Shown: positions 5,952-60,708 of the stretch, piece by piece
Layout: every line of letters begins with the position of its first letter
Numbering within the stretch: position 1 is the first letter of the stretch
Program-made: the position numbers and the translations under genes
Sequence record: LR756504.1
Direction: 5' to 3' (one strand)
DNA length: 64,000 nucleotides
The notes under the pieces: model-generated
Databases searched by the model: none
Told to the model about the DNA's origin: nothing
What the model saw: the letters and a program-made list of their open reading frames with translations, nothing else

Positions 5952-5983
5952 GAAAAAACTCCTATAAATTAGGAGTTTTTTCT
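5951..5983. terminator. Bidirectional intrinsic terminator
   Basis: AGAAAAAACTCCT-ATAAATT-AGGAGTTTTTTCT between convergent genes. Confidence 0.8.
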
Positions 5984-8046
5984 TTTATGAAATAAAATTT
6001 ATTACTGTTTATCATTTCATATTCAGACATGTTATTAAGGATATTTAGAATTTTATTATGATCAAAACGATCAGGTAAATTTTTAATATCTAAGTATAAC
6101 ATTTCTAATTGACTTTCTTTATCAAATTTTTTAATATCTTCGTGTGTTATATATTGAATAACTTCATTTTTGATATATTTTAGCTTATTTTCATTTGAAA
6201 GTAAGCTAAAAAATTTATAATAATCAGTATCTACATAAATATCAAGTGTTCTCACTTCTGTTTGATACATATAATATCCATAGCCTTGTCTAGTTTTAGG
6301 TTTACCGCTATTATTTAAATTGTGCCCACCTTTATTTTCTTTGAATGCTATCCCAATTTTAGGCTCATTATTTATAAATTCTTTTATAATGCCTTGAACA
6401 TTATAAAATACTGAGCCTCTGTTTATACATACTACTTTATCACCTATTTTAAAATTATTGATACTTTTAAATATATTTAAAATACTTATAGTATCATTGC
6501 TGAATAAATTGGCAATCTGCTCAATAATTTCATTATCTGATTTATTAAAATTAATATCATGTTTAATTACTTCAACATCTTTTGATGGTATTGAATAATG
6601 GCTTCTACTTGTTCTTATACGATAATCATTGGCTCTTTCGTATTCATATGTGAATATTTGATCTATAAGAGTATTCATTTGTTCAGGCCAACCATTTCGT
6701 TCTACACTTTCACGTAAAGAAGGAAGAATTTTAATTTTGTTTAAAGATAAATTCTTTAGATTTTTTAAATAATTAATATTTTTTTGTAGGAATGTTTTAA
6801 TATAATTATGTTTATCTTCGGGTTCTAAATAATCAATGATATTATCATTTAAAGATGATATATTATGAATATTTTTTATAATTATATCTCTTGAGTTTTC
6901 ATTCGCTACTACCAAAGGTATATTTATGTGTTCGATGTATTCATTTATATTATCGATGCTTATGAATCTACTTTTGTTTTCTACAAATTTATCGGAAACA
7001 AATTTTCTTATAGTGTAATGATTTTCAACTTTATATTCATTATTATTACACTCCATTTGTTTAGCGCTAATAATAGTTACAGGTGATTTAAAATGTTGAT
7101 ATAAAGCGGTTGAAGAATCTTTAATACTTAGATATGAATTGTTTGTATTGTGATTACCACTAGTTTGTGTCCAATATTGTTTATAATTTTGATCATCACC
7201 ATTACTAGATAAATATTCTATTATATCACCATTAACAACATCTTCTTTTACAAATTTCATAGTATCCATGTATGGCTTTGATACCGAATCCCATTCTACA
7301 TTTTTTGGTAAGTGTGTTCTTAGTTCAAAATCACTAATATCTTTTATACCATTTGTTATTATATGACAAGAATTACTTTGTTTATTTTTAAACCACCATC
7401 CATTTTTAATAGCATAGTCTTTAAATATTGCTTCAGCAGAATATTTATATGTGTAAATTCTATCTAAAAAGAATATTTTTTCACCATCTAAAGTAATATT
7501 TTCCCATAGAATAGCTCTACCTTGTAATTTTTTATCAGCACTCAATAAACATAATAGAGATACATTAGGATGTTTTTCGTATATTGAAAAATAATCTTTA
7601 CATTCTTTATGTCTCATACAAGAATTGTATAGAGATGCATTAGCTTCACCAGATTTATCATATTTAGATTCGTTATACCATTTTGGTATATTTTTACCTT
7701 TGAATATTTCAAAATGTGAATCTTGTTGAAATATTTTATATTTATTTACAAAGTCTTCTATTTCTTTGTCATGAAAAGTCATATTCTTTTTTTGTGATAA
7801 TGCAATGATTAATCTACCAATTTTCATTGTTTCTCTTCTTGAAGAATCGAATTCTTTGCCATCACCTTCCCATCTATTTTTTAAAAAACTTATTTTACCT
7901 TCGTCTTTTATAAAGTCAAAATAAGAAAAGTCAACATCTAATTGTTCTTTCTCTTCCGCACATTTAAGAATAAATTCAGCAATTGGATGATCGATTGATT
8001 GTAATTTATTCATTAAAGATTGACCTAAAATAATACATTTTTGCAT
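5962..8046 (-). CDS. SCM/GRAIVW/DRIY family paralogue 1 (uncharacterised), with C-terminal SH3-like segment
   Basis: SLYNSCMRH, GRAILW, FLDRIY, GWWFK, KPYMDTMKF shared with five other ORFs; FKIGDKVVC...IGIAF segment near the C-terminus. Confidence 0.85.
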   Translation of the reverse strand: MQKCIILGQSLMNKLQSIDHPIAEFILKCAEEKEQLDVDFSYFDFIKDEGKISFLKNRWEGDGKEFDSSRRETMKIGRLIIALSQKKNMTFHDKEIEDFVNKYKIFQQDSHFEIFKGKNIPKWYNESKYDKSGEANASLYNSCMRHKECKDYFSIYEKHPNVSLLCLLSADKKLQGRAILWENITLDGEKIFFLDRIYTYKYSAEAIFKDYAIKNGWWFKNKQSNSCHIITNGIKDISDFELRTHLPKNVEWDSVSKPYMDTMKFVKEDVVNGDIIEYLSSNGDDQNYKQYWTQTSGNHNTNNSYLSIKDSSTALYQHFKSPVTIISAKQMECNNNEYKVENHYTIRKFVSDKFVENKSRFISIDNINEYIEHINIPLVVANENSRDIIIKNIHNISSLNDNIIDYLEPEDKHNYIKTFLQKNINYLKNLKNLSLNKIKILPSLRESVERNGWPEQMNTLIDQIFTYEYERANDYRIRTSRSHYSIPSKDVEVIKHDINFNKSDNEIIEQIANLFSNDTISILNIFKSINNFKIGDKVVCINRGSVFYNVQGIIKEFINNEPKIGIAFKENKGGHNLNNSGKPKTRQGYGYYMYQTEVRTLDIYVDTDYYKFFSLLSNENKLKYIKNEVIQYITHEDIKKFDKESQLEMLYLDIKNLPDRFDHNKILNILNNMSEYEMINSNKFYFIKEKTPNL

Positions 8047-8156
8047 TTCAAAACTTTTAAAATATGAATGAATTCAATTGATAAAGAAAAAGAAGGCTGA
8101 AAAAATCCAACCTTCTTTTCTAAAAATTTTAATATTTAAACTGATAAAAATACAGA

Positions 8157-14723: not shown

Positions 14724-17324
14724 ATGGACTTTAAAAAAACCTTTATAGATTTAACACAATGGGTAATACCTCATGGATATGAGGAAAGTATTACACATTT
14801 ACTACCAGAAGGATGTCAGAAAGACGGTAAAGGTAATTATTCTATTACTATAGGGGAGTCTGAAACGCTTTTTACATGTCACTTAGATACAGTATCAAGT
14901 AGAGCTAAAATTACACATGTTTTTGAAGATAATTGGATTAAAACAGATGGCACAACAATATTAGGTGGTGACAATAAAGCAGGAGTATGTATTTTGATGT
15001 ATCTAATTGAACAAAATGTTCCTGGTACATATTACTTCTTTGTGGGTGAAGAGTGTGGACGTTTAGGTTCTAAATGGGCATTAGAAAATAATGGAGACTT
15101 TTTTAGGAAGTTTAAACGTGCGATAGCTTTTGATAGAAGAAATAGGGGCTCTATTATTACTCACCAAAGCTCAAGACTTTGTGCATCATCAGAATTCACA
15201 GAAGCTCTTTCTAAAGAAATGGCTAAATCGGGATTAGAATATAAAGCTGATTCAGGTGGATCATATACGGACACTTATACATTTATCGATGCAATACCAG
15301 AGTGTACTAATTTGTCGGCATCAGTTATGGGTGAACATACAACATCTGAAAAGATTGATATTGTACACTGTGAAGAAATTGCAAAAGCCGCTTCATTGGT
15401 TGATTGGGAAAAATTACCTTCTAATAGAGACTTCTCTAAAAAAGAATGGAAAAGTTATAATAACTATAGTAGTGAATGGGATAGCTATTTTGATGAATAT
15501 CGTTCTTATGATGTAAAACCTAAAGCAGAAATTAAGAAAAAATCTATTAGTGAATGTGGATTAGAATTTGATGTTTCTAATATTGATAAGTTCTTCAATT
15601 TGAAAAAAATTGTTGAAGGTGAAGAAATTTACTATAAATCAGAAGATGGTAAAAGTTATTATATTAATATTGATTATAATTTAGTTGCTGTTGAAGAAGA
15701 TATGTATCATGTATATCCATATTTCATACAGCATTATGTTAAAAAAGATAATTTACCAACTACATTTGAAGAATTATGGTATGTTATAAAAGATTTAAAA
15801 ATTTCTTTTAAACCAATTGAAGAACAAAAAAATATTCCATTCTATCAAAACAATATTTGTGAGTATTTTGATTTGGAAGAAATAATGGATAATCACAAAA
15901 ATAGATTATTTATAGACCCATTGACTTTAAGAGAGTTTCAATTTGAATTTGATGATAAATGGGTTGGTATATGGGAAGTTTTAAATAGAGAACCTTATGT
16001 GAGTCCGATATATGCCAACGATAATACTTTTAAATCATTCTCTGAACTGTGGGCTGATATTAGAGAATACGTACCATTTAGAAGAAACGGTAAAGCTGAA
16101 AATCCATTCTTTAATGGGGGGACTAAAATTAAGTCTTATAATAAGATACTTGATGTAGTAAATGTTAATAATGTTATACCATTTACACATGAAAATGTTG
16201 ATAAATATTTTGATTTAGTAAAAGTTAGTGTAAATAAAAGTACAGTTGATAATTACTATAAAAGTCCTAATGGAGAAAAAATATATTTTATTGAGATTTC
16301 ACCAAATTCAAAAGCTTATGTTTGGGAAAGGAATTCTGGATCTTCATCATTAGTTTATAATAAACAATTCTTTTCTTTTGATAGTTTTTGGAGTGAGATT
16401 AAAGATAAAGTAGAATTTAAAAAGAGAGAGGATGATTTAGATGATATACTATCTCAATTGAAAATTCCATTTAGATCAGATAATATCGAAAAATTCTTTA
16501 ATTTAAAAAGAAGAGAAAGAGATAATAGTCATACTAACGCAAATAAAAAAAGTTTATTTTTCAAATCTGAAAATGATAAATCATACTTTTTTAAAATCGA
16601 AGAAGATGGGTATGTATACATGGTAGATTTATCTGGTCAATTAAATGGTAAAACACAAGTTATTATTAATTATGTTAGATATAATTCATTCGAAAAACTT
16701 TGGGAAGATATTAAAGATAAGGTAGATTTTAAAAAAAATGAATCTAAACCAGTTTTATCAAAAGAATCTTTAAAAATACCATTTACAAATGATAATGTTT
16801 GTAGGGTTTTTAATTTTAAGGAACAACAACTAAGAAGTAGACATTATTTAACAGAAGATACCAATATACAGTATTATTTTGATATTCTTGAAAACAATAT
16901 AGTTTATTTGTGGGAAAGAATAAATGGAAAATTTAACACTATTGTTGATGGTGCGGTGTATAATTCATTTGATGATATATGGAAAGATGTTCAATTACAT
17001 GTTAAATTTAAAAAGAGAGAAGTAGTATCATTTACACAAGATAATGTATCAACGTATTTTGATTTGGTAGATAGTAAATTCAGATGTTTTTATTATCATA
17101 AAGAAACTGATAAAAATTTCTTTATACACTGTGGTAAAAATAAAAATAAGTCAGTCGTTAAATTGGTTAAATATAAAGATTTACCAGAAACAAATACAGG
17201 CGTTAAACAGGTTGATAGAATGGAAAATTTATATTTTAGCGGTGTTAATTCTATTAATTCATTTGATGAATTTTGGGAGGAAATTAAAGATAAAGTACCA
17301 TTTAAAAAAAGAGGAGCTAATTAG
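14724..17324 (+). CDS. M28/M20-like zinc peptidase fused to six ~85-95 aa repeats
   Basis: FTCHLDTV, LGGDNKAG, VGEE, AFDR, YTD, GEHT; repeats of the form PF..DN..K.F.L ... SF..LW..IKDKV.FKK. Confidence 0.8.
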   Translation: MDFKKTFIDLTQWVIPHGYEESITHLLPEGCQKDGKGNYSITIGESETLFTCHLDTVSSRAKITHVFEDNWIKTDGTTILGGDNKAGVCILMYLIEQNVPGTYYFFVGEECGRLGSKWALENNGDFFRKFKRAIAFDRRNRGSIITHQSSRLCASSEFTEALSKEMAKSGLEYKADSGGSYTDTYTFIDAIPECTNLSASVMGEHTTSEKIDIVHCEEIAKAASLVDWEKLPSNRDFSKKEWKSYNNYSSEWDSYFDEYRSYDVKPKAEIKKKSISECGLEFDVSNIDKFFNLKKIVEGEEIYYKSEDGKSYYINIDYNLVAVEEDMYHVYPYFIQHYVKKDNLPTTFEELWYVIKDLKISFKPIEEQKNIPFYQNNICEYFDLEEIMDNHKNRLFIDPLTLREFQFEFDDKWVGIWEVLNREPYVSPIYANDNTFKSFSELWADIREYVPFRRNGKAENPFFNGGTKIKSYNKILDVVNVNNVIPFTHENVDKYFDLVKVSVNKSTVDNYYKSPNGEKIYFIEISPNSKAYVWERNSGSSSLVYNKQFFSFDSFWSEIKDKVEFKKREDDLDDILSQLKIPFRSDNIEKFFNLKRRERDNSHTNANKKSLFFKSENDKSYFFKIEEDGYVYMVDLSGQLNGKTQVIINYVRYNSFEKLWEDIKDKVDFKKNESKPVLSKESLKIPFTNDNVCRVFNFKEQQLRSRHYLTEDTNIQYYFDILENNIVYLWERINGKFNTIVDGAVYNSFDDIWKDVQLHVKFKKREVVSFTQDNVSTYFDLVDSKFRCFYYHKETDKNFFIHCGKNKNKSVVKLVKYKDLPETNTGVKQVDRMENLYFSGVNSINSFDEFWEEIKDKVPFKKRGAN

Positions 17325-25933: not shown

Positions 25934-27895
25934 ATGCCTAAACAAATAATACTCAGTGATGAATTGGTATCGGTTTTAAAATCTATCGATCATAGATTCT
26001 CTACAATACTTATTGATTCACATGAAAATAAGGAAGAAGTGGTTGATAATTCTTATATAGCTTTTTCTAAGGAAGAAGGTGAAGTATCATATTTACCAGT
26101 AAAGCGAGAAAATTCTAAAAATGGAAAAGAGTTAACTGAAAGTGATAAATGGCTAACTGGTAGACAGTCCATGTCTATTGGAAAATGGGTAAGAGCAATT
26201 TTACAAATTAAAGGTGTCCAATATAAAGAGTTTGAATTGGAAGAATTTGTAAATCAATATAAATATCAACAATTTGATTTTAATTTTATTTTAGTTAAAG
26301 GTCAAGATATTGTTAAATGGTACAAAGAAAAAAATTACGATAATCGGTATGGTAGTGGTAGTCTTTTTAATAGTTGTATGAGAGCCGTAAGCTCGGACTA
26401 TTTCAAAATTTATAGAGATAACGAAAATGTTTCCATGTTGTGTCTAATAAATAAAGAAACAAAGAAACTTATTGGTAGAGCTATTGTATGGGATAAAACT
26501 TCTATCAATGGCGAAGATTCGGTATTTTTAGATAGAATATACACAACAAAATCTCTATTTGAATCAGCAGTTAAAAATTATTGTAAAAGTAGAGGTTGGT
26601 ATTTTAAAAATAATCAAGGTAGTGGAAATGTATCTATTAGTAATGGTAAAAAAACTATAGAAAATCCAAATATTATATTTCATCTAAATGAAAAAATAAA
26701 TTGGGAAAATTGTCCTAAAATGCCATATATTGATACAATGTCATTTTTTGGATATATTTCTAATAATGATAAATGTTTACCAGTTCTTACTTCATATAAT
26801 AAATGTAATTTTAAATTTAATTTTAAAGGTACTGATGGAAATATTTATGATAATGTAAATTATGATAGTAGAAGAGACTTACTTAATAGGAGATTGACTG
26901 TTGGTGATTTAATTTTAATTAAATATGATAATGGATATGCTTGGATTGACGATACTGATTATGGAAGAGTATATCAAGAGAATTTTATATTTAATATTAA
27001 ATTGATCAAAGGTAGTGATGAATTGATAACTGTTAAAGGCGTAAAGAAAAATTTAAAATCTAAATTTAATCATAGTGATACTAATATAATATCACATATT
27101 GGTGATGTAGTCCCAACAGAATATCATGTATATTTATTTGATTTATTTAAAGATGATTTAATTTTTGAAGTAGATAATACTTATCAATATTTAAAACAAT
27201 ATACTCAATTTAAATTATATTCTATATGTTCAGAACATTTTAAAATGGTTCTTGATGAAGCACCACAGACAGTAATTTCGAGTGATATTACACAACTATC
27301 TAAAGAGCTATTAAATATAATTTTAGAAAAAAATCCAGAAATTATATTTAATATTGATATTCAAAAATTTATTAGAACTCAACATTTATTTGAAGAGACG
27401 GTTATTCAAAAATATATTATAAAATATCCCGATTTGTCTTTAATCGAAGGTAAAATAGCTATAAAGGTATCTAAAAAAATAATTGAAAAAATATGCAAGT
27501 CTAATATGTATAAAGTCACTAAAAATGAAATAGAAAATAAGTATGGTGTATCGAAATGTTTTTTAACAGATAGTGGTGATGATGATATTTATATTCAAGC
27601 TGAACCATATTGGTTTACTTGTTTATCACTTAAAACTAAAGTAAAACGTTTGCGAGAATTAAGTAAAATAGAAAAACTTATAAAATTTATAACTAAAGAT
27701 AAATCTATACCATATGATTATGGTGAAGTTATTGGTGTAAATGATGGATATAGAAGAGATTCCATTCGAGTTAAATTTAAAAATGGTGATGTTTATTGTT
27801 CAGTTAAAGAATTAACAATTTTAGAAAGAGATTTAAAAGAAAACTTCTATCAATATTTAAATACGCAATCACACTATGATATGTTTAGATTTTAG
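25934..27895 (+). CDS. SCM/GRAIVW/DRIY family paralogue 2
   Basis: SLFNSCMR, GRAIVW, FLDRIY, GWYFK, PYIDTM; leaderless. Confidence 0.85.
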   Translation: MPKQIILSDELVSVLKSIDHRFSTILIDSHENKEEVVDNSYIAFSKEEGEVSYLPVKRENSKNGKELTESDKWLTGRQSMSIGKWVRAILQIKGVQYKEFELEEFVNQYKYQQFDFNFILVKGQDIVKWYKEKNYDNRYGSGSLFNSCMRAVSSDYFKIYRDNENVSMLCLINKETKKLIGRAIVWDKTSINGEDSVFLDRIYTTKSLFESAVKNYCKSRGWYFKNNQGSGNVSISNGKKTIENPNIIFHLNEKINWENCPKMPYIDTMSFFGYISNNDKCLPVLTSYNKCNFKFNFKGTDGNIYDNVNYDSRRDLLNRRLTVGDLILIKYDNGYAWIDDTDYGRVYQENFIFNIKLIKGSDELITVKGVKKNLKSKFNHSDTNIISHIGDVVPTEYHVYLFDLFKDDLIFEVDNTYQYLKQYTQFKLYSICSEHFKMVLDEAPQTVISSDITQLSKELLNIILEKNPEIIFNIDIQKFIRTQHLFEETVIQKYIIKYPDLSLIEGKIAIKVSKKIIEKICKSNMYKVTKNEIENKYGVSKCFLTDSGDDDIYIQAEPYWFTCLSLKTKVKRLRELSKIEKLIKFITKDKSIPYDYGEVIGVNDGYRRDSIRVKFKNGDVYCSVKELTILERDLKENFYQYLNTQSHYDMFRF

Positions 27896-41351: not shown

Positions 41352-42560
41352 ATGTCTAATAACAATAAATTAGTTATAGTTCCTAAAAGAACAAATTATA
41401 GCGTTTATCCTCCAATAACCGCACCAGAAATACCTATTACATTGAATGTGAACCTATTGAAAGACGTACACTCTGTTCAAACGAGTTCATATAAATGTGA
41501 TAGAATGATGCAGTATATTATAGGCTTTTTGAAAAAAAAGAAAAATGTTCATGTTCAAGAGGATGCATATGGTAATATTTATGCAACTAAAGGAAATGCT
41601 GATTTATATCCAGCAATTGTTTCTCACACAGATACAGTTCATAGTATTCATGAACATTTTCAGGTTATGCAGGATGAAAATATTATTTGGGCATTTTCAA
41701 ATGATAAACGAACTCAAGTAGGTGTTGGTGGTGATGACAAAGTGGGTGTGTTCATGTGTCTTTCTATGCTTGAATTACTTCCAAAAGTTAAAATTGCTTT
41801 TTTTAAAGACGAAGAAGTTGGTTGTATTGGTTCAGGTAGAGCTAATATGCAATTTTTTGATGATTGTGGATTTGTTTTGCAATGCGATAGAAAAGGTTCT
41901 GACGACTTCATTTATAATGCGGGTACAGAATTGTATGGTGCTAATTTTGAAAAAGCTGTTGCACCATATTTAGAAAAACATGGGTATAGAGAAACTACGG
42001 GGTTAATGACAGATGTTTTAGAATTGAAGGGAAAAGGATTAGCTGTAGCATGTGCTAATATGTCATGTGGTTATTACTCGCCTCATTCTGATAATGAAGT
42101 TCTTGATTTAAATGCAGTGCAAAAATGCTATAATTTAGTATCCGAATTGATGTTAGATTTCATAGATACTCGTTTTCCACACGATAAAAACAATAAGCAT
42201 AGTAAGGGGGGCTATTCGTACTCATATAGTGGGTACGGGTATGGGCGCGATAATGATGATGATTTTGACAACTACGACTATGGAAGAAGCTCGTATTTTA
42301 GAAATGATAACAGAGAAAATATCGAAGATGACGAAACGGATTTTGATGATATTTATAACAATGGTGGCTTATCTATTAGTGAAGATGATATTTTAGAAAA
42401 TTGGGGACTTACTAAAAAAGAGAATGATTATTATGCAGTAAATGATAAATGTAAGGAGTGTAAAGAAATTCTAGAAGAAGACATTGATGGTATAAAACTT
42501 TGTCCATGTTGTAATTCGTACAAACATATACCAAAAATGTATTTAAGAGATACAATTTAA
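41352..42560 (+). CDS. M28/M20-like zinc peptidase with acidic linker and C-terminal zinc ribbon
   Basis: SHTDTVH, GGDDKVG, DEEVGC.GS, QCDR, TDV, GYY.PH; CKEC...CPCC. Confidence 0.8.
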   Translation: MSNNNKLVIVPKRTNYSVYPPITAPEIPITLNVNLLKDVHSVQTSSYKCDRMMQYIIGFLKKKKNVHVQEDAYGNIYATKGNADLYPAIVSHTDTVHSIHEHFQVMQDENIIWAFSNDKRTQVGVGGDDKVGVFMCLSMLELLPKVKIAFFKDEEVGCIGSGRANMQFFDDCGFVLQCDRKGSDDFIYNAGTELYGANFEKAVAPYLEKHGYRETTGLMTDVLELKGKGLAVACANMSCGYYSPHSDNEVLDLNAVQKCYNLVSELMLDFIDTRFPHDKNNKHSKGGYSYSYSGYGYGRDNDDDFDNYDYGRSSYFRNDNRENIEDDETDFDDIYNNGGLSISEDDILENWGLTKKENDYYAVNDKCKECKEILEEDIDGIKLCPCCNSYKHIPKMYLRDTI

Positions 42561-42682: not shown

Positions 42683-44842
42683 ATGGATTTCAAAAAAACT
42701 TTCTTGAAATTTACCCAATGGACTATTCCACACGGATATGAGGAAACTATTACTCACCTTTTACCAAATGGGTTGGAAAAGGATGAAGTTGGTAATTATA
42801 GAATCGTTATTGGCGAAAGTGAAACATTATTTACTTGCCACTTGGATACAGTATCTACTCGTATGAAAATTAATCATATCATACAAGGTGATATCATTAG
42901 AACTGATGGCACAACAATATTAGGTGGTGACAATAAAGCAGGAGTATGTATTTTGATGTATCTAATTGAACAAAATGTTCCTGGTACATATTACTTCTTT
43001 GTGGGTGAAGAAACTGGTTGTATTGGTTCAAGATGGGCTTTAAAAAATGAGCCTGACTATTTTAGAAAGTTTAAGAGAGCTATTGCATTCGACAGGAAAA
43101 AATCGGGTTCAATTATTACAAAACAAAGAGGTAGTATTTGTGCAAGTATAGATTTTGCCGAAGCTCTTTCGAAAGATTATGGTAAAAATGGATTACAATA
43201 TCGTCCTGATGATACAGGGGTTTATACCGACACAGCCGTATTCATGGGTATAATTCCAGAATGTACAAATATTTCAGCAGCAGTTTGGGGTGAACATACT
43301 AGGGATGAATATGTAAATATCAAATTAATTGAACAAATTGCACATGCATCTGCTAAAATTAATTGGGAGAAATTGCCAACAAAACGTACACCAAGAGACG
43401 AAGAAAAAGAGAAAAAGAAAATTACTACTTATGGTAATAATTATGATGAATATGGCAGTGGTCACACACATTATAATAGTAGAAATAAAAGCACGTCTTA
43501 TCAACATAATAATACTTGGCAAAATACAACCAAAAAAGATGATGATGGTATTCCTGTCGATGGTGCTGATTTAACTTTTAATGTTGATAATGTTCCATCT
43601 TTCTTTGAATTAACTAAAATTCAAAGTCATGGTGATACTGATGATAAATCTGAATATTTTGCGGATAAAGAAGGTACAATTTGGATGATCACTATTAATA
43701 GTGATACTGTATCTATTGCAAAAGAATTGCAGAATGGTATGCCAGATATTGTATATCATGAATCATTGAAGTCAAATATTCCAAAAAATTTCAATGAATT
43801 ATGGGAAAGAATTAAAGATGTTGTGTCACTAAAAAGAAAAAAGAAAAAGAAGAAAACTCAAAATGCCGTTATTAAAGAGACTAAGCGTACAGTGACTTTA
43901 ATAGTTCCGCCGTCTGTTTCATTCATTAAGATTCAAGATATTATTAATGATGATAGTAGAATTAAAGCCGTTGAATTAGTAAGAAATGGTAGTGCTGTTA
44001 GCGGAGATAAAAAATATTTTGATATAGCTTTAGTATTTGATAGTAGCAAACCATATGAAGTTGTATCCAATATAGTGGATAGCACTATAGAAAAGTTTAA
44101 AAAACAACTTGGTGCTATTGTTAGTACTAAAGCTGGTACAGTTGTTGGTAAATTTGATAATAGTGGTACTCAAATGAATATGTTTGGTAAACCACTTACT
44201 ATTGATAATATAGTTAAAGTTTTTGATCTTAAAAAAGCAGAAGTTGGTGAAGAAGGTTCTCTAATATTTAAGGAGCGATTTGAAGATAAAGATGGTACTA
44301 TTTATAATATTGAAATTGATGGAAATATTGTAAGCGTATTCTTGATAAGTAGCTCTAATACTAAAGGACAATATAAACTTTTATTTCATGGTGCTGTAAA
44401 ATCGTGGGATGAATTATATGATTCTATTAAAGATAAAGTTGGATTTTCTAAAAAGGATAGTGAACCATTATATAATGAGAAAAATTTTGATAAAGCCTTC
44501 GAACTTGTAAATATTAATTCTGATAGTAAACCAGGTGTTTCTCTTAAAGATTCTTATAGAGATGTTAAGGGTAATGTGTGGACATTTACAATACAAGCTG
44601 ATGGTGATACTACAATTTTCTTAAATAGAAGCAGTATCGCTAGTAGTGGACAAGGATACTTTGTTATCAGAATTAATGGTATTAAATCTTATGATGATTT
44701 TGTTAAGAAAATAAAAGAAAGTGATAGAAGTGTAGATTCATTTGATAAGACGGTATTATTTAATCTTATTGATACTTATAAATTCAAAAAATCTTCTGTA
44801 ATTGATGATGAAGAGGAAGAAGAGGATGACGACGATGAATAA
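42683..44842 (+). CDS. M28/M20-like peptidase paralogue with three ~90-aa repeats and acidic tail
   Basis: N-terminal ~240 aa closely similar to 14724 (MDFKKTF, FTCHLDTV, LGGDNKAG, AFDR, GEHT); three repeats; ends DDEEEEEDDDDE. Confidence 0.82.
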   Translation: MDFKKTFLKFTQWTIPHGYEETITHLLPNGLEKDEVGNYRIVIGESETLFTCHLDTVSTRMKINHIIQGDIIRTDGTTILGGDNKAGVCILMYLIEQNVPGTYYFFVGEETGCIGSRWALKNEPDYFRKFKRAIAFDRKKSGSIITKQRGSICASIDFAEALSKDYGKNGLQYRPDDTGVYTDTAVFMGIIPECTNISAAVWGEHTRDEYVNIKLIEQIAHASAKINWEKLPTKRTPRDEEKEKKKITTYGNNYDEYGSGHTHYNSRNKSTSYQHNNTWQNTTKKDDDGIPVDGADLTFNVDNVPSFFELTKIQSHGDTDDKSEYFADKEGTIWMITINSDTVSIAKELQNGMPDIVYHESLKSNIPKNFNELWERIKDVVSLKRKKKKKKTQNAVIKETKRTVTLIVPPSVSFIKIQDIINDDSRIKAVELVRNGSAVSGDKKYFDIALVFDSSKPYEVVSNIVDSTIEKFKKQLGAIVSTKAGTVVGKFDNSGTQMNMFGKPLTIDNIVKVFDLKKAEVGEEGSLIFKERFEDKDGTIYNIEIDGNIVSVFLISSSNTKGQYKLLFHGAVKSWDELYDSIKDKVGFSKKDSEPLYNEKNFDKAFELVNINSDSKPGVSLKDSYRDVKGNVWTFTIQADGDTTIFLNRSSIASSGQGYFVIRINGIKSYDDFVKKIKESDRSVDSFDKTVLFNLIDTYKFKKSSVIDDEEEEEDDDDE

Positions 44843-48953: not shown

Positions 48954-50984
48954 GTGATATATTTAAAGAGATTTTTACAATATGATGCAATATTAGAAAG
49001 CTTATTACTTGAAAAAGTACTATATTTTGGTGAAAAAATGAGAGATGTACTTAAAAATATGAAGCATCCATATGCAAAGTATATGGTAAATATGGATCAT
49101 GGTGATAATTTAGAAGATACTGATAATTCTTATATTGAATATAGTCCTAAATTGGGTATGGTTTCTTGGCTTCCTGCTAATAGAGAAATAGATTTCCAAA
49201 CTAAACAAGAATTACCTGAAACTGAAAAGTGGGCCACTAAAAAAAGACAAGATGTTTCTATAGGTAAAATTGTTTCTGCTATATTGAAAAAATCACCATA
49301 TGTCAATATATCTGAATCTGAATCTGAATTAGAAAAGTTTATTAACGAATATAAAGCTATACAAAATACAGGTAGTTTTAAATTAGTTAAAGGTTATGAT
49401 GTAAAGAAATATTATTTTGAAGGTAATTATGATCATGAGTCGGATGAAAGTTCACATTCTTCATTGTTNNNNNNNNNNNNNNNNNNNNNNNGTTGTCAAG
49501 AGTATTTTAGTGTCTATATTAAAAATCCTAATGTATCATTATGTATTTTATTGACAGATGATGATAAGATACAGGGTAGAGCTATAGTATGGTATAATTC
49601 TACTATAGATGGTAAACCAGAAGTTTATATGGATAGAATATATGCGGTTAGTGATTCTATCACCGATAAATTTAAATCATATGCACATTCTAACGGTTGG
49701 TATTGTAAAACAAAACAAGGATCAGAATATTATGTTGTGAGCAATGGTAAGTTGGTAATAGAACATCCTAATATAAAAGTTATATTACCTGATGGTGATT
49801 GGGAAACTTGGGAAAAACCATATATGGACTCATTGAGATATTTTTCATATGATGTTATTGATGGTAAATATATTCCAGTTTTATTTAATTATTTCATGCA
49901 AAATGCTTCAAACTGGAAACAAAAATGGGACGAAACAAATGGATTTTTTATTTCCAATAGATATTATGTTGATACACTTAAAGAAGTTAGAGATTTATCA
50001 TCCAATACAGGATTAGATTTTAATAATTTATTATTAGCAAATCCTACTAAAATAAATGGAAATCCTGAGATATGGAAAGTAGATGATAAAAATGTTTTAG
50101 TTATGAATTACTATTCAACTATTATATCAAGTGTGATAAGAAATGAAAGCGAAGAAGATATAATGAAATTAAAACCATTTATTTCGAATTATGAAACGCA
50201 CGAACTTGTTAGAAAAATTGGTTCAAAAGTTTTATGTGAAGAATATCGCTCTGATATAATGATGGATATGCTAGAAAATACTAATGTTTATATTAAGGGA
50301 ATTGATAGTTCTGAAATAAGAAACTTCATTCAAAAGATATTAGGTGTGCAAATAATGTCTAAAGAAATTAATGAAAATTTTTCTAAGGTTAGAGAATTTA
50401 TAATTGTGTTAAGGCCTATAACATTTGGTATAATTTTAAATGATAATTTTGAATTAAATATTAATATAGATGGTGATATTAATGCTTTGGAAAATGAATA
50501 TTACACAAAGCTTAAAGATGATGAAAAAAGTAAACGCTATTTAATTTCTATTATTGAAAATGAATATAATATTGGTGGAGAAAGTGCAGTTATAAAAATG
50601 TGTAAAGAATATATTAGAACAGTTGTTTTACAAGATAAAGATGTAATTGAAATGTATAACGAATATATAGCAAATAGTCGTCAAGTAAAAATGAATTTTA
50701 TAGGAAAATATTTCAATGAATTTGTACAAAGTGTTAATACTACATATTTGCTTAACATAATAAAAGAAAATACGGAAAAAATCAGAGAATTTGCTATAAA
50801 AAATATTTTAACTAATAATCCATCTTTTGCAATTAATGAAATATTAGAATCTAATACAGAATTCGGAAAAAATACTAGAATTTCATATGTTCAAAAATGG
50901 CTTAGATTAAATTTTCCTAATGTAGAAGTCAAAGCTGAAATTCGTGGTGATAAATTTTGTTATATTGTGGACAAATTTCCTTAA
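48954..50984 (+). CDS. SCM/GRAIVW/DRIY family paralogue 4 (23-N gap over the SCM motif)
   Basis: GRAIVW, YMDRIY, GWYCK, KPYMDSL; leader MIYLKRFLQYDAILESLLLE. Confidence 0.82.
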   Translation: MIYLKRFLQYDAILESLLLEKVLYFGEKMRDVLKNMKHPYAKYMVNMDHGDNLEDTDNSYIEYSPKLGMVSWLPANREIDFQTKQELPETEKWATKKRQDVSIGKIVSAILKKSPYVNISESESELEKFINEYKAIQNTGSFKLVKGYDVKKYYFEGNYDHESDESSHSSLXXXXXXXXXCQEYFSVYIKNPNVSLCILLTDDDKIQGRAIVWYNSTIDGKPEVYMDRIYAVSDSITDKFKSYAHSNGWYCKTKQGSEYYVVSNGKLVIEHPNIKVILPDGDWETWEKPYMDSLRYFSYDVIDGKYIPVLFNYFMQNASNWKQKWDETNGFFISNRYYVDTLKEVRDLSSNTGLDFNNLLLANPTKINGNPEIWKVDDKNVLVMNYYSTIISSVIRNESEEDIMKLKPFISNYETHELVRKIGSKVLCEEYRSDIMMDMLENTNVYIKGIDSSEIRNFIQKILGVQIMSKEINENFSKVREFIIVLRPITFGIILNDNFELNINIDGDINALENEYYTKLKDDEKSKRYLISIIENEYNIGGESAVIKMCKEYIRTVVLQDKDVIEMYNEYIANSRQVKMNFIGKYFNEFVQSVNTTYLLNIIKENTEKIREFAIKNILTNNPSFAINEILESNTEFGKNTRISYVQKWLRLNFPNVEVKAEIRGDKFCYIVDKFP

Positions 50985-51037: not shown

Positions 51038-51069
51038 GTTGTAGACTTAAATAAATATTAGTATATTTG
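51038..51069 (+). promoter_or_regulatory. Bacteroidota-type promoter
   Basis: GTTG - 20 nt - TATATTTG (51062); implies the real start is ATG 51088. Confidence 0.55.
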
Positions 51070-53004
51070 GTATATAATATAAAAAATATGCCTAATACAA
51101 AACAAAAATCTACAAAAGCTATTATATTAAGTGATAAAATGCTTGATAAATTATCTAAGATTAATCATTTCATTTCCAAGAATTTAATTAATTTACATAA
51201 AAAGAGAGAAGCTTTAGATATAAAGTTTAGTTATATAGATATTTCTACAGAAGATGGAATGGTTAGTTATTTAAGTACTAATAAAGAAGTTGACTTTAGA
51301 ACGGGTAAAGAAATATCAGATAATGAGAAATGGATAATAAAAAGTAGGACAAATGTCCGTGTAGGTGCGGTAATTCGTTCAGTATTAGAAGCTAAGAATA
51401 TTAAATTTACTGATTCCGATATTGAAGATTTTTCGAATAAATTTAGATCATCCGAATCTAAATTTAGATTCGAATTAGTTAAAGGTGATGATATTAAGAA
51501 ATGGTATAATTTTATTAATTATGCTAAAGATATAAATGATAGTAGTTTAAATGGTAGCTGCATGAGACACAATCTTTGTGGAACTTTTTTATCAGTTTAT
51601 ACTAAAAATAAGAATGTTTCTATGCTTGTCTGTATCGACAAAAATGAAAAACTTCTTTCAAGAGCTATCGTATGGCATAATTCTATTATAGGTAAGGTAA
51701 AAAATCAAACTTATGTTGATAGAATTTATTGTTATGATGATAGATTTCTTTCAACTGTAAAAGATTATATTCATTCTAAAAGTTGGTGGTGTAAAGAAAG
51801 ACAGAGTAGTGATAGCTTTATATTAAATAATGGTAAGACTACTTTGAGTAATCCTAATATTAAAGCTAATATACCGTTGTTGAATTGGTGTTCTTTAAAG
51901 AAGCCTTATATGGATACTATGAAGTATCTTAAAGAAGATTTAGTTAATGGTGAATTGATGTTATACTTAGGAAACAAAGATGGTAAAAGTGTGGAATATT
52001 GGACAGCCGTTAATGGTGGCTATAATGAAAATCGTGGATATGATTCTATATTAAAACGATTGGGTATTCTCTCTAAACATTTCAAAGTTAAAGTTGATAA
52101 TATTAAATTTAAAGATGATGTTTTCTTTTTGAAAAATAAAAAATATAATTTAGTTAAATATAATGGACAACTTTCAAAGTTTGTTAAGGATAATATTAAT
52201 TGTTTGTCTGAAATTGATTTTTCTAAATTTGTACCAATAAACACAATTATTCAACAACATACAGATTTAATAGATAAAATTTATCGGAAAAGAATTGATA
52301 AATATATCTTACAAAATTTAAGCGTAAGACAATTAAAACCTAATAATTTTTATAAATTGCTTACTGATATTTTATCAGAAGGACAAAATATAGATAAACT
52401 TGTAAATATTTTAGAAAGAAGAATCAAAGAGAGAAATACACAAAAATATAGTTTTATACGAGATATTCCTTCTCTTTATTCATATCGTTATGATACATTA
52501 GATTATCCACTTTTAGGTATAAATAAAAGTGATAACAAAAATGTTAAAATGAATAAAATAATAAAATATATCAAAAAACAAAATTTTGCGCATGTTTGTG
52601 CAATACAATTTTTAGATAAAATTATTTGTATCGATGATATAATCAGTATGATGGATAAGAATGCATTGAAAACTTTGAAATCGCAGGCAATGGATTACAT
52701 TTTTTGTAGTGGTATTACTATGGGTGTGTTAAAAGTTATTTTTAATACAGATAATACAAATAACCTATTTAAAAAAGTTAAGAATATCATTAATATAAAA
52801 TGTATTGATGTTGATGTTTTAGATACTAAGTCGATTGCTAAATTAGTTAATAAAATGGGTGCTAAATTAATTAGTTATGGAAATAAAGATAATCTTATGA
52901 ACAAATATATTTTAAAAGAAATTGTTGATAAAAAAGTTAAAGATAAGAAAAAAATTGTGAAGAAGGTTATAAAAAAATCTGTAATGAAGAAAGTCCTGAA
53001 ATAA
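51067..53004 (+). CDS. SCM/GRAIVW/DRIY family paralogue 5 (likely start 51088)
   Basis: SLNGSCMRH, SRAIVW, YVDRIY, SWWCK, KPYMDTMKY; very basic C-terminal tail. Confidence 0.85.
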   Translation: MVYNIKNMPNTKQKSTKAIILSDKMLDKLSKINHFISKNLINLHKKREALDIKFSYIDISTEDGMVSYLSTNKEVDFRTGKEISDNEKWIIKSRTNVRVGAVIRSVLEAKNIKFTDSDIEDFSNKFRSSESKFRFELVKGDDIKKWYNFINYAKDINDSSLNGSCMRHNLCGTFLSVYTKNKNVSMLVCIDKNEKLLSRAIVWHNSIIGKVKNQTYVDRIYCYDDRFLSTVKDYIHSKSWWCKERQSSDSFILNNGKTTLSNPNIKANIPLLNWCSLKKPYMDTMKYLKEDLVNGELMLYLGNKDGKSVEYWTAVNGGYNENRGYDSILKRLGILSKHFKVKVDNIKFKDDVFFLKNKKYNLVKYNGQLSKFVKDNINCLSEIDFSKFVPINTIIQQHTDLIDKIYRKRIDKYILQNLSVRQLKPNNFYKLLTDILSEGQNIDKLVNILERRIKERNTQKYSFIRDIPSLYSYRYDTLDYPLLGINKSDNKNVKMNKIIKYIKKQNFAHVCAIQFLDKIICIDDIISMMDKNALKTLKSQAMDYIFCSGITMGVLKVIFNTDNTNNLFKKVKNIINIKCIDVDVLDTKSIAKLVNKMGAKLISYGNKDNLMNKYILKEIVDKKVKDKKKIVKKVIKKSVMKKVLK

Positions 53005-56803: not shown

Positions 56804-56815
56804 ATGTATTTATTG

Positions 56816-56888: not shown

Positions 56889-56985
56889 ATGTATTATAAT
56901 AAACGATTATTTGTTTAAAATGTTATTTATATATTTGTAAAAATTTGTCATTTTTTCCCACTTTTCTACATACTATTTAATATTG

Positions 56986-58644: not shown

Positions 58645-59112
58645 TTAAGATAAAAATTTTAATAGTGGTTTTTGTTGTTCTTCTATTAAATCAACTGCCT
58701 CATTTTTAGAAAAGAACCCTGCTTCTGATATTTCTAATTTATCAAGGAAATATCTTAGAATCATATTATTGTATAATTTGAAATCTAATTCATTTCTATT
58801 AATTATTAATACGTAATATTTCAATTCTTTATTTTTAGCACCTTTACTATAGTTTAAAACGCCATTAATAGAATTTTCTAATTTATGTGGATGTATTTTT
58901 ATATTAGCTTCTTCTTCTAATTCTGTTATAGCAGTTTCTAAATCCGACATATCTGTTTCGTTGTGTCCTTTAGGAATTGACCATTTATATGGTTTGTCTT
59001 TAAATTTTGTTGGATGTACTAATAATATTTTATTCTCCATGATGAGAACTATACCACTAAGAAAATGTTTGGTGTTATTTTTATTAAAAGTATCAAATTT
59101 ATCAAAATACAT
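58645..59112 (-). CDS. Nudix hydrolase
   Basis: WSIPKGHNE...LETAITELEEEANI Nudix box; N-terminus MYFDKFDTF. Confidence 0.85.
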   Translation of the reverse strand: MYFDKFDTFNKNNTKHFLSGIVLIMENKILLVHPTKFKDKPYKWSIPKGHNETDMSDLETAITELEEEANIKIHPHKLENSINGVLNYSKGAKNKELKYYVLIINRNELDFKLYNNMILRYFLDKLEISEAGFFSKNEAVDLIEEQQKPLLKFLS

Positions 59113-59136
59113 ATTTTTTAATTATTTTTGTTAAAA

Positions 59137-60708
59137 TTATACAGGTTTATATGTACCGTCTGTGGAAGACCATTGTTGTTTAGTATTATTTGTCATTTTA
59201 GAGGATAGATAATATTTAGGATTCTTACTATCTTTAATTTTTAATTTATATGTTCCTGGATTATTTAATGGTTCAACACAATCGGCTGGTACAAAGTAAT
59301 CAGAAATTTCACTCTCTGTAAAATAATACCCTCTCATCGTACCTTTAAATAGAGTATCATTACTATCTCTAACTGTAAATACTTTACCAATATATTTAAT
59401 CATATCCGCCCAACCATACTTTGCTATATCAGCAGTTATTTTTATTTTTTCACCTGGTTGAAGTAATCTATATTCAGAATTCTTAAATTCATTATTTGAT
59501 GAACCTGTAGTATTGTTAAAATATTTTAAAGTATCTAAGTATGGTTTGGATATCCTACTCCATCCAACATTAGGCAACTCAAATTTTAACACATCATTAT
59601 ATGTAATGCTTCCATTTGAAATTGTACTATCTTTATGTGATTGAACTACTTTAAACCACCAATTTTTTCTTTTAGCAAATGTTTTAAATAATTCTACTTC
59701 TGCTTCAGAATTATAGTAAATTCTATCCATGAAATTTATTTTCTTACCATCTTCCATTTCAACACCATTCCATACAATAGCTCTACCCATTAATTTACCA
59801 TCATCATTTAATAATATTAATAATGATACATTAGGATTATCTGTATAAACAGTAAAGTAATTATCACACTTATCATGTTTCATGCAACTTTTATTTAATG
59901 GTGATTCCTCGAAACCTGATGTTTGATAACTCGAATAATTATACCATTTTTTAATATCTTGTCCTTGTACTATTTGAAAGTTTTTAAAGATAGTAACTTC
60001 CAATTGAATAGATTTAAAAGTATTACCAAATTTTTCAATTTCTACATCCGCAAAAGATTGTCCTTCTTTTTGCATCAAAGCTCTTACTAGTTTACCTATC
60101 GATGTTGTTTGTCTATATCTATTTTTCCAAAATTCTTCATTCTCGACATTTTTTTCTCTATTAGCTGGTAGGAAACTTACCATACCTGGTTCACCTTCAA
60201 TATTCAAATATAAATGTTGAAGAGATTCTTTATTATTTTCTAAACTTAAAATAAATTGTGCTATTTTATCATCCTTGGGAAATTTTTCTAAAATCTCAAT
60301 AATTTTAGAGCTTAAAAATTCCTTATTTCCTATAGATAGTGGATTTTCTATTTGTTCTGGTGTCAAAGCCAATAATTTTTCGGTTGGTTTAATAGTATGA
60401 GCCTGTCCTCTTCTTTCACCTTTCTTAATTGTTATTAATTTCTTTAAATACAACCAACTTATATGTCTTGCATAACTGTTAGTATTTTCTTTTTGTTTAG
60501 TTATTGGATTAACACCAACTAATTTTGTAAGCGTCATACCTTCTGGGTTAGCTTGAAGGAGTTTAATATAATGTGAAATCTTTTCCCAATTTCTGAATTT
60601 TAAACCTGATACTTCACCCTTATCAATTCTATTAAAGTAATGATCATCTCTCATTTCTTCTTTTTCTTCATTTAGAAAATCATCGAAAAATAGCATTGGA
60701 TGTAACAT
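59137..60708 (-). CDS. SCM/GRAIVW/DRIY family paralogue 6 with leader, N-terminal winged-helix and inserted SH3-like domain
   Basis: MLFFDDFLNE leader; SPLNKSCMKH, GRAIVW, FMDRIY, NWWFK, KPYLDTLKY. Confidence 0.85.
   Translation of the reverse strand: MLHPMLFFDDFLNEEKEEMRDDHYFNRIDKGEVSGLKFRNWEKISHYIKLLQANPEGMTLTKLVGVNPITKQKENTNSYARHISWLYLKKLITIKKGERRGQAHTIKPTEKLLALTPEQIENPLSIGNKEFLSSKIIEILEKFPKDDKIAQFILSLENNKESLQHLYLNIEGEPGMVSFLPANREKNVENEEFWKNRYRQTTSIGKLVRALMQKEGQSFADVEIEKFGNTFKSIQLEVTIFKNFQIVQGQDIKKWYNYSSYQTSGFEESPLNKSCMKHDKCDNYFTVYTDNPNVSLLILLNDDGKLMGRAIVWNGVEMEDGKKINFMDRIYYNSEAEVELFKTFAKRKNWWFKVVQSHKDSTISNGSITYNDVLKFELPNVGWSRISKPYLDTLKYFNNTTGSSNNEFKNSEYRLLQPGEKIKITADIAKYGWADMIKYIGKVFTVRDSNDTLFKGTMRGYYFTESEISDYFVPADCVEPLNNPGTYKLKIKDSKNPKYYLSSKMTNNTKQQWSSTDGTYKPV

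What the first reader, a model, noticed from the sequence alone, without database searches (positions are those of the whole stretch)
5962..60708. Six dispersed paralogues with an uncharacterised SCM...GRAIVW...DRIY core and polymorphic C-termini
Seen: ORFs 5962, 25934, 33712, 48954, 51067 and 59137 share a ~250-aa core in the same order: SY....G.VS(F/Y)L, R....IG, EIE.F.N.YK, F..V.G.DI..WY, SL..SCM, VY..N.NVS, GRAIVW, DRIY, GW(W/Y).K..Q, KPY(M)D. Their C-termini are unrelated, apart from SH3-like segments in several. Inference: sixfold expansion with a conserved Cys/Arg/Asp/Tyr set and swapped C-termini suggests an enzymatic effector family retargeted to different substrates. The strand-DRIY-helix order resembles GNAT beta4-alpha3, so a GNAT/FemABX-like acyl or aminoacyl transferase is my guess. 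I cannot assign it to a named family.
Basis: partly seen in the sequence, partly recalled or inferred. Interest (0 to 1): 0.88.

Follow-up and report, generated by a model that had tools for sequence, protein, structure and literature searches.

The report
Unnamed GNAT-fold phage protein family
Six genes in this window (14 in the complete 636-kb huge-phage genome) share an unnamed, phage-wide ~300-residue domain with an acetyltransferase-like (GNAT) fold that lacks the usual coenzyme A motif, each fused to a different tail; it is probably an untested kind of modifying enzyme.

Summary
All six ORFs exist as given and share a core of 280-320 aa (33-45% identity; HMM E 1e-70 to 1e-88). Their C-termini are unrelated. 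Both N runs keep frame and alignment register.

The IMG/VR record holds 8 copies. The identical 636-kb "Mahaphage" genome LR756504.1 holds 14.

The core belongs to a large, almost purely viral family (4,459 clusters at 50% identity). No Pfam, PHROG, NCBIfam, PADLOC or PDB sequence match was found, and every source calls it "hypothetical protein".

Recurrent neighbours are M42/M28-type aminopeptidases and NAD-salvage genes.

Best reading: a divergent GNAT-fold transferase head on variable targeting tails. Donor and substrate are unknown. It is not FemABX, Mom or PcfJ by sequence.

The parts
5962..8046 (-). Copy 1 (P0001, 694 aa). Core = aa 1-~300 (nt ~7147-8046): N-subdomain aa 1-107, GNAT-like domain aa 108-290. 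Orphan C-terminal tail with an SH3_12/KOW-like barrel at about aa 523-607.
25934..27895 (+). Copy 2 (P0002, 653 aa). Core aa 1-~305, followed by an unrelated C-terminal tail.
33712..35964 (+). Copy 3 (P0003, 750 aa). Core aa ~18-320. The DRIY motif is hidden by the N run 34334-34355, but frame and register are kept. The tail carries SH3-like segments (sub-threshold SH3_12 at aa 587-647).
48954..50984 (+). Copy 4 (P0004, 676 aa from a GTG; the start codon is uncertain). Core aa ~18-325. The SCM motif is hidden by the N run 49469-49491, but frame and register are kept.
51067..53004 (+). Copy 5 (P0005, 645 aa from a TTG; an ATG lies 7 codons downstream). Core aa ~18-315. Very basic tail (net charge +34, pI 9.8).
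59137..60708 (-). Copy 6 (P0006, 523 aa). N-terminal extension resembling a winged helix-turn-helix (aa ~38-122), core aa ~128-420, short tail. Lies among NAD-salvage-type genes on the minus strand.
41352..42560 (+). Context: M42/M28-like aminopeptidase paralogue (402 aa) with a CxxC...CxxC tail. It is 44% identical over 249 aligned residues to Cellulophaga phage phi38:1 gp038, the gene next to that phage's GNAT-like gene.
42683..44842 (+). Context: M42/M28-like aminopeptidase paralogue (719 aa) with a conserved N-terminal head of ~250-300 aa.
14724..17324 (+). Context: M42/M28-like aminopeptidase paralogue (866 aa), 40% identical to 42683-44842 over ~600 aa.
3483..4586 (-). Context: bona fide M42 aminopeptidase (Pfam E 1.1e-78), one gene away from copy 1.
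58645..59112 (-). Context: NUDIX hydrolase 25 bp downstream of copy 6, on the same strand.
61481..63061 (-). Context: NAMPT-type nicotinamide phosphoribosyltransferase upstream of copy 6. A GIY-YIG homing endonuclease gene (60740-61474, + strand) lies between them.

Best explanation
Each gene encodes a soluble cytoplasmic protein. Its conserved ~300-aa head has two parts: a small alpha/beta subdomain (aa 1-107 of copy 1) and a strongly diverged GNAT-fold domain (aa 108-290).

The head is most likely a group transferase (acyl or aminoacyl type). Its active site would sit in the usual GNAT beta4/beta5 cleft, but with its own residue set:
- S142-C143, in the alpha1-alpha2 loop;
- R177, on beta3;
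- D195-R196-x-Y198, at the end of beta4;
- K220, on beta5;
- P258-Y-x-D261, before beta6.

It lacks the canonical CoA pyrophosphate loop and helix alpha4, so the donor is either bound unconventionally or is not acyl-CoA.

The unrelated tails would bring each paralogue to a different macromolecular target. Tail and extension modules include SH3/KOW-like barrels, a winged HTH and, in relatives, DnaJ-type zinc fingers. Tail net charge runs from -28 to +34.

The targets are most plausibly amino groups of proteins. This inference rests on the recurrent pairing with M42/M28 aminopeptidases and on a proteostasis-rich neighbourhood.

Shown: the family, its expansion, the fold class, the missing CoA motif, the invariant residues and the gene neighbourhoods. 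Inferred: catalysis, donor, substrate class and the targeting role of the tails.
For: Family and expansion:
- E 1e-70 to 1e-88 for all copies.
- 8 copies in the window's record and 14 in the complete genome.
- 4,459 representatives at E <= 1e-3, of which 1,306 at E <= 1e-30.
- Atlas clusters are 62-100% viral.

Fold:
- AlphaFold2 with 90 sequences gives pLDDT 94.1 and pTM 0.84.
- The Foldseek top rows are nearly all GNATs, best NatD 4ua3_A at E 1.7e-3.
- The shallower 8-sequence model gave the same picture.
- Atlas GNAT clusters reach TM 0.50-0.54 normalised by the match.

Active-site-like conservation:
- Y124, S142, C143, Y156, R177, D195, Y198, P258 and D261 are invariant in 90 diverse cores. 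R71, G77, R196, W181 and K220 are conserved at >= 90%.
- The DSSP strands 174-186 and 189-199 form a hairpin, which would put R177 opposite Y198. This is my inference.

Modularity:
- Tails are unrelated.
- The copy 1 tail has one orthologue among 5.8 billion proteins.
- Winged HTH, SH3/KOW-like barrel, DnaJ_CXXCXGXG/BSD2_CRD in 5 of 43 relatives.
- No transmembrane segment.

Context:
- M42/M28-like genes lie directly next to the GNAT-like gene in Cellulophaga phages, in L013 (overlapping genes) and in L014 (two alternating pairs). One lies 6 kb away in L012, and the window has three paralogues plus a true M42.
- These peptidase-like genes keep residues that are invariant with the true M42 and match the positions expected for its metal and catalytic residues: H, D, EE, D, D, H.
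- The window also encodes GrpE, M16, Mx1 and Rce1-like proteins.
Against: - No activity, ligand or target is known for any member.
- No GNAT Pfam model matches any member.
- The defining Q/RxxGxG/A motif is absent, and DSSP shows beta hairpins where alpha4 should be.
- I could not compute whether the invariant residues form one pocket, because coordinates are not exposed.
- The aminopeptidase link rests on 5 of about 12 independent contexts.
- A complex prediction for one adjacent pair gave no answer.
- NAD-salvage genes are an equally frequent neighbour, so the context is ambiguous.
Confidence: 0.42

Rival explanations
1. Aminoacyl-tRNA-dependent transferase, working like FemX, L/F-transferase, ATE1 or phage Mu Mom. 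The GNAT-like head would take an amino acid from charged tRNA and add it to a protein N-terminus, a cell-wall precursor or a nucleic acid.
For: - The CoA loop is missing, as in tRNA-dependent GNAT-fold enzymes (my knowledge).
- There is a phage precedent: Mom is a GNAT-fold enzyme that uses Gly-tRNA and not CoA, with essential R, S and D/R residues (PMC13219725).
- A GluRS gene lies in the window, with GrpE and then two of the aminopeptidase-like genes just downstream.
- tRNA-Glu and RtcB lie near the Cellulophaga homologue.
- An aminopeptidase partner would fit N-terminal chemistry.
- The Atlas gives a weak match to MprF LPG_synthase_C across residues 18-298 (TM 0.35-0.38).
Against: - hhalign against a Mom family profile gives 0.2% probability.
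- No FemAB, Leu_Phe_trans, ATE or Mom Pfam hits.
- No tRNA-dependent transferase appears in the top 50 fold matches.
- The core is near-neutral (median pI 5.9, median net charge -2.5), with no sign of an overall basic tRNA-binding surface.
Confidence: 0.15
2. Ordinary acetyl/acyl-CoA-dependent N-acetyltransferase of host or phage proteins, like phiKMV Rac or RimI/NatD. It would simply be too diverged for the sequence models.
For: - The closest folds are CoA-dependent GNATs, including the protein N-terminal acetyltransferases NatD and RimI and the effector VipF.
- Jumbo phages carry many GNATs that are predicted to modify host proteins (PMC7824862).
Against: - The Q/RxxGxG/A pyrophosphate-binding motif after beta4 is absent family-wide (consensus DRIYxxxDxxxxxFKxYA).
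- Alpha4 is replaced by beta hairpins.
- No Acetyltransf_* HMM hit in 6 + 43 proteins.
Confidence: 0.17
3. Cysteine-dependent chemistry other than transfer, on a GNAT-like scaffold. Examples would be a deacylase, amidase or thioester-forming enzyme that uses the invariant C143.
For: - S142-C143 is 100% invariant in 90 cores, just before helix alpha2. D195, R177 and Y198 are also invariant.
- One BFVD relative is labelled 'putative hydrolase'.
Against: - There is no invariant His to complete a Cys-His dyad.
- I know of no precedent for such chemistry on this fold.
- The 'hydrolase' label is an unverified automatic name.
Confidence: 0.1
4. Enzyme of nucleotide or NAD-related metabolism, or a counter-defence factor belonging to NAD-reconstitution islands.
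For: NAD-salvage genes lie within one to three genes, or a few kb, in 5 of about 12 contexts:
- window copy 6: NUDIX, NAMPT, NUDIX;
- L005/L006: NadE adjacent, NMNAT-like, isochorismatase, NAPRTase;
- L011: NAMPT and NUDIX;
- L017: NAPRTase and Pribosyltran;
- Cellulophaga phages: a phosphoribosyltransferase.
Against: - The other five window copies and many other contexts have no such neighbours.
- These genes commonly sit in auxiliary-gene islands, so proximity may reflect a shared expression class.
- I know of no NAD-binding GNAT precedent.
- No PADLOC hit.
Confidence: 0.08
5. Non-catalytic GNAT-like binding or scaffold module, for example a structural or regulatory adaptor.
For: - The classical cofactor motif has been lost.
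- The tails are extremely variable.
Against: Nine invariant residues, mostly polar or aromatic (S, C, R, D, Y, D), persist across sequences only 28-45% identical. That pattern is typical of an active or ligand site.
Confidence: 0.08

Closest known systems
GNAT superfamily (GCN5-related N-acetyltransferases; e.g. PDB 3t9y, RimI 7n1l, NatD 4ua3, VipF 7wx7)
   Same: The order beta1-alpha1-alpha2-beta2-beta3-beta4-alpha3-beta5...beta6-beta7 is seen in model residues 108-290. All top-50 fold matches are GNATs. The conserved residues lie at the end of beta4, on beta5 and in the alpha1-alpha2 loop, which in GNATs (my knowledge) are the cofactor and substrate cleft.
Phage Mu Mom (Pfam PF25680), a tRNA-dependent DNA adenine-modifying GNAT
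   Same: A phage GNAT-fold enzyme that does not use CoA. Its essential R, S and D/R residues lie around the beta4/beta5 cleft. It carries extra nucleic-acid-binding elements (PMC13219725).
   Different: No profile similarity (hhalign probability 0.2%). No PF25680 hit. Mom has no invariant SC motif and no N-terminal subdomain. It is single-copy and has no variable tails.
FemABX / L/F-transferase / ATE1 / MprF C-terminal domain (aminoacyl-tRNA transferases with a GNAT fold)
   Same: GNAT-type fold without the CoA loop. There is a weak Atlas match to LPG_synthase_C over residues 18-298 (TM 0.35-0.38).
   Different: No HMM hits and no top PDB fold matches. No tandem GNAT domain pair could be shown. 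The core is near-neutral.
   Same: None was found.
   Different: The PF14284 HMM finds nothing in the whole 288.6-kb record, even at E <= 10 in six frames. It finds nothing in the six proteins or in 43 relatives. The fold level was not tested.
Uncharacterised homologues: Cellulophaga phage phi38:1 gp037 and Calle_1 gp065
   Same: True family members (E ~1e-57 to the core HMM), each next to an M42/M28-like peptidase gene. Both are cultured phage-host systems.
   Different: Single copy, 442-aa class. No function is assigned ('hypothetical protein').

Membership tests
GNAT superfamily (fold level) | Mixed alpha/beta fold: beta1-alpha1-alpha2-beta2-beta3-beta4-alpha3-beta5-alpha4-beta6(-beta7) | tested here: inconclusive
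GNAT superfamily (acetyl-CoA-dependent enzymes) | Motif A, Q/R-x-x-G-x-G/A, in the beta4-alpha3 loop, which binds the CoA pyrophosphate | tested here: not met
   The family consensus after beta4 is DRIYxxxDxxxxxFKxYA, with no conserved Gly.
GNAT superfamily (sequence families Acetyltransf_1/7/10 etc.) | Match to a Pfam GNAT-clan HMM | tested here: not met
   No such hit at E <= 1 in the six proteins or at E <= 0.01 in 43 diverse relatives.
GNAT superfamily | Binding of acyl-CoA and acyl transfer | not testable with these tools
   Needs biochemistry, or docking on model coordinates that the tools do not expose.
FemABX (PF02388) | Match to the FemAB HMM; tandem GNAT domains; use of aminoacyl-tRNA | tested here: not met
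   No HMM hit. No FemX among the top fold matches. tRNA use was not testable.
Mom family (PF25680) | Profile similarity to Mom; conserved H58/Y59, R111, S124, D149/R151 | tested here: not met
   hhalign of A4 against the Mom alignment A6 gives probability 0.2%. No PF25680 hit.
PcfJ-like (PF14284) | Match to the PcfJ HMM | tested here: not met
   No six-frame match in the whole 288.6-kb record at E <= 10, and none in 49 proteins.
Known anti-phage defence proteins (PADLOC) | Match to a PADLOC model | tested here: not met
   None for the eight paralogues.

The most novel reading that the evidence does not exclude
The family would be a new class of GNAT-fold enzymes that does not use acyl-CoA, using aminoacyl-tRNA for example. 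Together with the co-occurring M42/M28 aminopeptidases, it would rewrite the N-termini of chosen host proteins, acting as a phage-encoded writer of N-degron-type or blocking marks. The 14 paralogues of a 636-kb phage would then form a substrate-specific arsenal, addressed by their orphan tails.
Probability: 0.08. Interest if true: 0.9.

Novelty: new variant of a known kind. Interest (0 to 1): 0.62.

Why it matters
This is one of the larger protein families with no name at all. It has thousands of 50%-identity clusters, nearly all viral, and is absent from Pfam, PHROGs, NCBIfam and PADLOC. It now has a confident structural model and a sharply defined set of invariant residues.

It is expanded to 14 copies in one of the largest phage genomes known. 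It also occurs as a single copy in cultured Cellulophaga phages, so it can be tested at the bench.

A GNAT fold that has lost the CoA loop yet keeps an invariant Ser-Cys/Arg/Asp-Arg-x-Tyr site suggests either a new donor or new chemistry. Mom was recently shown to be such a case.

The repeated pairing with aminopeptidases that appear intact, and the placement beside NAD-salvage genes, give concrete hypotheses about host take-over or counter-defence.

Tried and rejected
- **Pfam, PHROGs and NCBIfam on the six proteins:** no hit to the core.
- **Pfam and PHROGs on 43 diverse relatives:** only C-terminal DnaJ-type and BSD2 zinc fingers in 5, plus single unrelated PHROG hits.
- **PADLOC:** nothing for the family.
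- **PDB sequence search with 8- and 90-sequence profiles:** only chance hits, with E >= 0.1.
- **PcfJ HMM on the whole record:** nothing at E <= 10.
- **Mom:** no similarity with the single sequence or the family profile.
- **Secondary weak HMM matches of the core inside the C-terminal tails:** not significant (scores below 2 bits). I dropped the idea of repeated N-subdomains.
- **Shared tails between the GNAT-like and peptidase-like families:** none within the window. There is only a 44-aa similarity in L014 (E 1e-4).
- **Copy 1 tail (aa 310-694):** one orthologue only; no usable Atlas feature hit.
- **The search for related loci with alignments A4 and A2:** No systematic neighbourhood census was therefore possible. 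Contexts come from 10 exact-protein look-ups and two annotated phages.
- **Complex prediction for the overlapping L013 pair (P0217 plus its aminopeptidase):** verdict 'no answer', score 0.00. This is no evidence either way.
- **Literature:** no paper found describes this family. The phi38:1 transcriptome paper uses a different gene numbering, so I could not assign gp037 to an expression class.
- **Tree of cores:** the eight copies in the record do not form one clade and sit on long branches, so the duplications are old. Because the public representatives may include the other six copies of the same genome, I draw no conclusion about orthology.

Full report
**1. The observation**

The window has about 26% G+C. 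It is 100% identical to LR756504.1 over the 20 kb that I compared. LR756504.1 is an uncultured phage genome of 636,363 bp. It matches the 636-kb genome among the four largest complete genomes of Al-Shayeb et al. 2020, which lie in the Mahaphage clade with a predicted Bacteroidetes host (PMC7162821).

An HMM built from 90 family cores scores the six at E 1e-70 to 1e-88.

It spans 278 HMM positions family-wide, and about 55 more residues after KPYMD within this clade. Beyond that point the C-termini have no blastp similarity.

**2. The N runs**

The run 34334-34355 falls on the DRIY motif of copy 3. The run 49469-49491 falls on the SCM motif of copy 4. In both genes the frame stays open and homologous on each side. 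The 8 and 9 X residues fill exactly the ungapped columns of the paralogues. The letters on both sides are therefore continuous and in frame as written. I did not fill or look up the masked letters, and I left out of my alignments the database representatives that might be the unmasked versions of these two proteins.

**3. Extent of the family**

- The IMG/VR record that holds the window (288,572 bp) has 8 copies. The two copies outside the window are P0007 and P0008.
- The complete 636-kb genome has 14 copies, all with open frames of 471-774 aa.
- Related huge phages have 7-14 tblastn places each. The only cultured phages with a clear sequence homologue are Cellulophaga podophages: phi38:1 gp037 and Calle_1 gp065, both annotated 'hypothetical protein'.
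- A profile search of 1.84 billion cluster representatives gives 4,459 hits at E <= 1e-3 and 1,306 at E <= 1e-30.
- Atlas clusters are 62-100% viral, and every source name is 'hypothetical protein'.
- Tandem arrays occur elsewhere: four in a row in L008-L010, three in L014 and two in L018.
- In a maximum-likelihood tree the eight copies do not cluster together and sit on long branches, so the duplications are old.

**4. What the core is**

No Pfam, PHROG, NCBIfam or PADLOC model and no PDB sequence matches the core.

AlphaFold2 with 8 sequences gave pLDDT 78.6. With 90 sequences it gave pLDDT 94.1 and pTM 0.84. The model of copy 1 residues 1-300 has two parts.

- An N-terminal alpha/beta subdomain (aa 1-107) carries the near-invariant R71 and G77.
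- A second domain has strands at 111-116, 162-168, 174-186, 189-199, 218-220, 265-271 and 274-280, and helices at 121-124, 147-158 and 204-214.

Fold searches with both models return GNATs almost exclusively.

- Foldseek: best is NatD at E 1.7e-3, and nothing reaches E <= 1e-3.
- ESM Atlas: GNAT clusters at TM about 0.5 normalised by the match, and a weak MprF C-domain match.
- BFVD: 22 viral relatives at E <= 1e-3, none with a known function (all 'uncharacterized' or unnamed; one is auto-labelled 'putative hydrolase'). They include remote ones in Klebsiella, Caulobacter and Shigella phages; Vibrio, Pectobacterium and Pseudomonas phages follow at weaker E-values.

**5. Active-site anatomy**

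In 90 diverse cores, Y124, S142, C143, Y156, R177, D195, Y198, P258 and D261 are invariant. R71, G77, F99, G117, Y129, L139, M144, A178, W181, R196, A212, K220 and T262 are conserved at >= 90%.

Mapped on the model:
- SCM lies in the alpha1-alpha2 loop.
- GRAxxW is on beta3.
- K220 is on beta5.
- PYxD precedes beta6.

From the hairpin register of strands 174-186 and 189-199, R177 should face Y198. That is my inference, not a measurement. In GNATs these positions surround the beta4/beta5 cleft (established knowledge).

Two canonical features are missing. No Q/RxxGxG/A loop follows beta4: the consensus is DRIYxxxDxxxxxFKxYA. Short strands at 229-245 replace alpha4.

The core is near-neutral (median pI 5.9) and has no transmembrane segment.

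**6. The tails**

- Net charge of the tails ranges from -28 to +34.
- The tail of copy 1 has a single orthologue (73% identity) among 5.8 billion proteins.
- Recognisable pieces are few. An SH3_12/KOW-type barrel appears in copies 1 and 3, supported only weakly. Copy 6 has a winged-HTH-like N-terminal extension (TM about 0.5 to TrmB/MarR/ArsR clusters). DnaJ-type or BSD2 zinc fingers occur in 5 of 43 relatives.

**7. Neighbourhoods (about 12 independent contexts)**

(a) A second family, M42/M28-like aminopeptidases.
- It lies directly beside the GNAT-like gene in the Cellulophaga phages (gp038/gp037), in L013 (overlapping genes) and in L014 (two alternating pairs). In L012 it lies 6 kb away.
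- The window itself has three paralogues (14724-17324, 41352-42560, 42683-44842) plus a bona fide M42 (3483-4586).
- These paralogues fall below Pfam thresholds. They nevertheless keep residues that are invariant with the true M42 and match the positions expected for its metal and catalytic residues: H, D, EE, D, D, H.

(b) NAD-salvage genes lie within one to three genes, or a few kb.
- Window copy 6: NUDIX, NAMPT, NUDIX.
- L005/L006: NadE adjacent.
- L011 and L017.
- Cellulophaga phages: a phosphoribosyltransferase nearby.

(c) The window is rich in proteostasis genes: GrpE, M16, Mx1-type and Rce1-like peptidases.

**8. Interpretation**

Best reading (confidence about 0.4): a diverged GNAT-fold transferase head with its own catalytic constellation and an unconventional or non-CoA donor, placed on variable targeting tails. 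It probably acts on protein amino groups and is functionally tied to aminopeptidases.

The fold, the motifs, the expansion and the contexts are shown. Catalysis, donor, substrate and targeting are inferred.

The rivals are:
- an aminoacyl-tRNA-dependent transferase in the manner of FemX or Mom (the Mom precedent is PMC13219725, but hhalign gives 0.2%);
- an ordinary acetyl-CoA N-acetyltransferase;
- Cys-dependent hydrolytic chemistry;
- an NAD-linked function;
- a non-catalytic scaffold.

**9. Comparison and novelty**

It works most like a GNAT. It fails the sequence-level membership tests for the GNAT Pfam families, FemABX, Mom and PcfJ, and it lacks the CoA motif. I file it as a new, unnamed family at the edge of the GNAT fold class: a new variant of a known kind.

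The GNAT guess is supported at fold level. The FemABX/aminoacyl and 'retargeted effector' parts remain untested.

Noticed in passing
window 14724-17324, 41352-42560, 42683-44842 (+ strand); true M42 at 3483-4586 (-): A second expanded family: M42/M28-like aminopeptidase heads (~250-300 aa) with variable tails, three of which (window 41352, phi38:1 gp038, L013) carry CxxC...CxxC. Pfam scores them below threshold, yet they keep residues invariant with the true M42 that match the positions expected for its metal and catalytic residues. The family co-occurs with the GNAT-like family in other phages.
   Followed up: partly
window 58645-63930 (- strand) and 60740-61474 (+): A run of NAD-salvage-type genes on the minus strand: NUDIX 63079-63930, NAMPT 61481-63061, GNAT-like copy 6, NUDIX 58645-59112. 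A GIY-YIG/NUMOD1 homing endonuclease gene on the opposite strand interrupts it. A PRPP synthetase gene lies at 12132-13076.
   Followed up: partly
window 56985-57060 (-) and 56815-56888 (-): ARAGORN calls a tRNA of undetermined type, with a four-base anticodon 'tcta', next to a tRNA-Met (CAT). It could be a frameshift-suppressor-like tRNA, an odd anticodon loop or a false call.
   Followed up: no
window 34334-34355 and 49469-49491: The two N runs fall exactly on the two most diagnostic motifs of the family (DRIY in copy 3, SCM in copy 4) and preserve length. They look like deliberate masks rather than assembly gaps.
   Followed up: yes
window 31809-33296 (+): A 495-aa ORF holds the family B DNA polymerase exonuclease domain and only the first part of the polymerase domain. 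A similar 499-aa PolB ORF with neighbouring GIY-YIG genes occurs in L018. This suggests a split or intron/HEG-interrupted PolB.
   Followed up: no
window 19854-25805 (-): A 1,983-aa ORF without any Pfam match, directly upstream of copy 2 and divergently oriented.
   Followed up: no
window 39021-41288 (+): A phage-encoded GluRS (tRNA-synt_1c, E 3.6e-92) is followed by GrpE and then two of the aminopeptidase-like genes. A T4-type RNA ligase 1 gene lies at 36905-38056.
   Followed up: no
window 8588-9463 (-), 17396-19069 (+), 53582-54121 (+): Several cell-wall enzymes are scattered among the paralogues: a GH25 muramidase, a 557-aa protein with PG_binding_1, and a GH108 domain with PG_binding_3.
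   Followed up: no
window 55634-56230 (-) and 58095-58595 (-): Another small paralogue pair (34% identity, E 4e-18) without a Pfam match. One member sits just downstream of copy 6 and its NUDIX gene.
   Followed up: no
whole record G000 versus LR756504.1: IMG/VR lists the window's record as 288,572 bp, 100% complete, with inverted terminal repeats. The sequence I compared (20 kb of the window) is 100% identical to a curated 636,363-bp genome. The IMG/VR record is probably a partial or artefactual assembly.
   Followed up: partly
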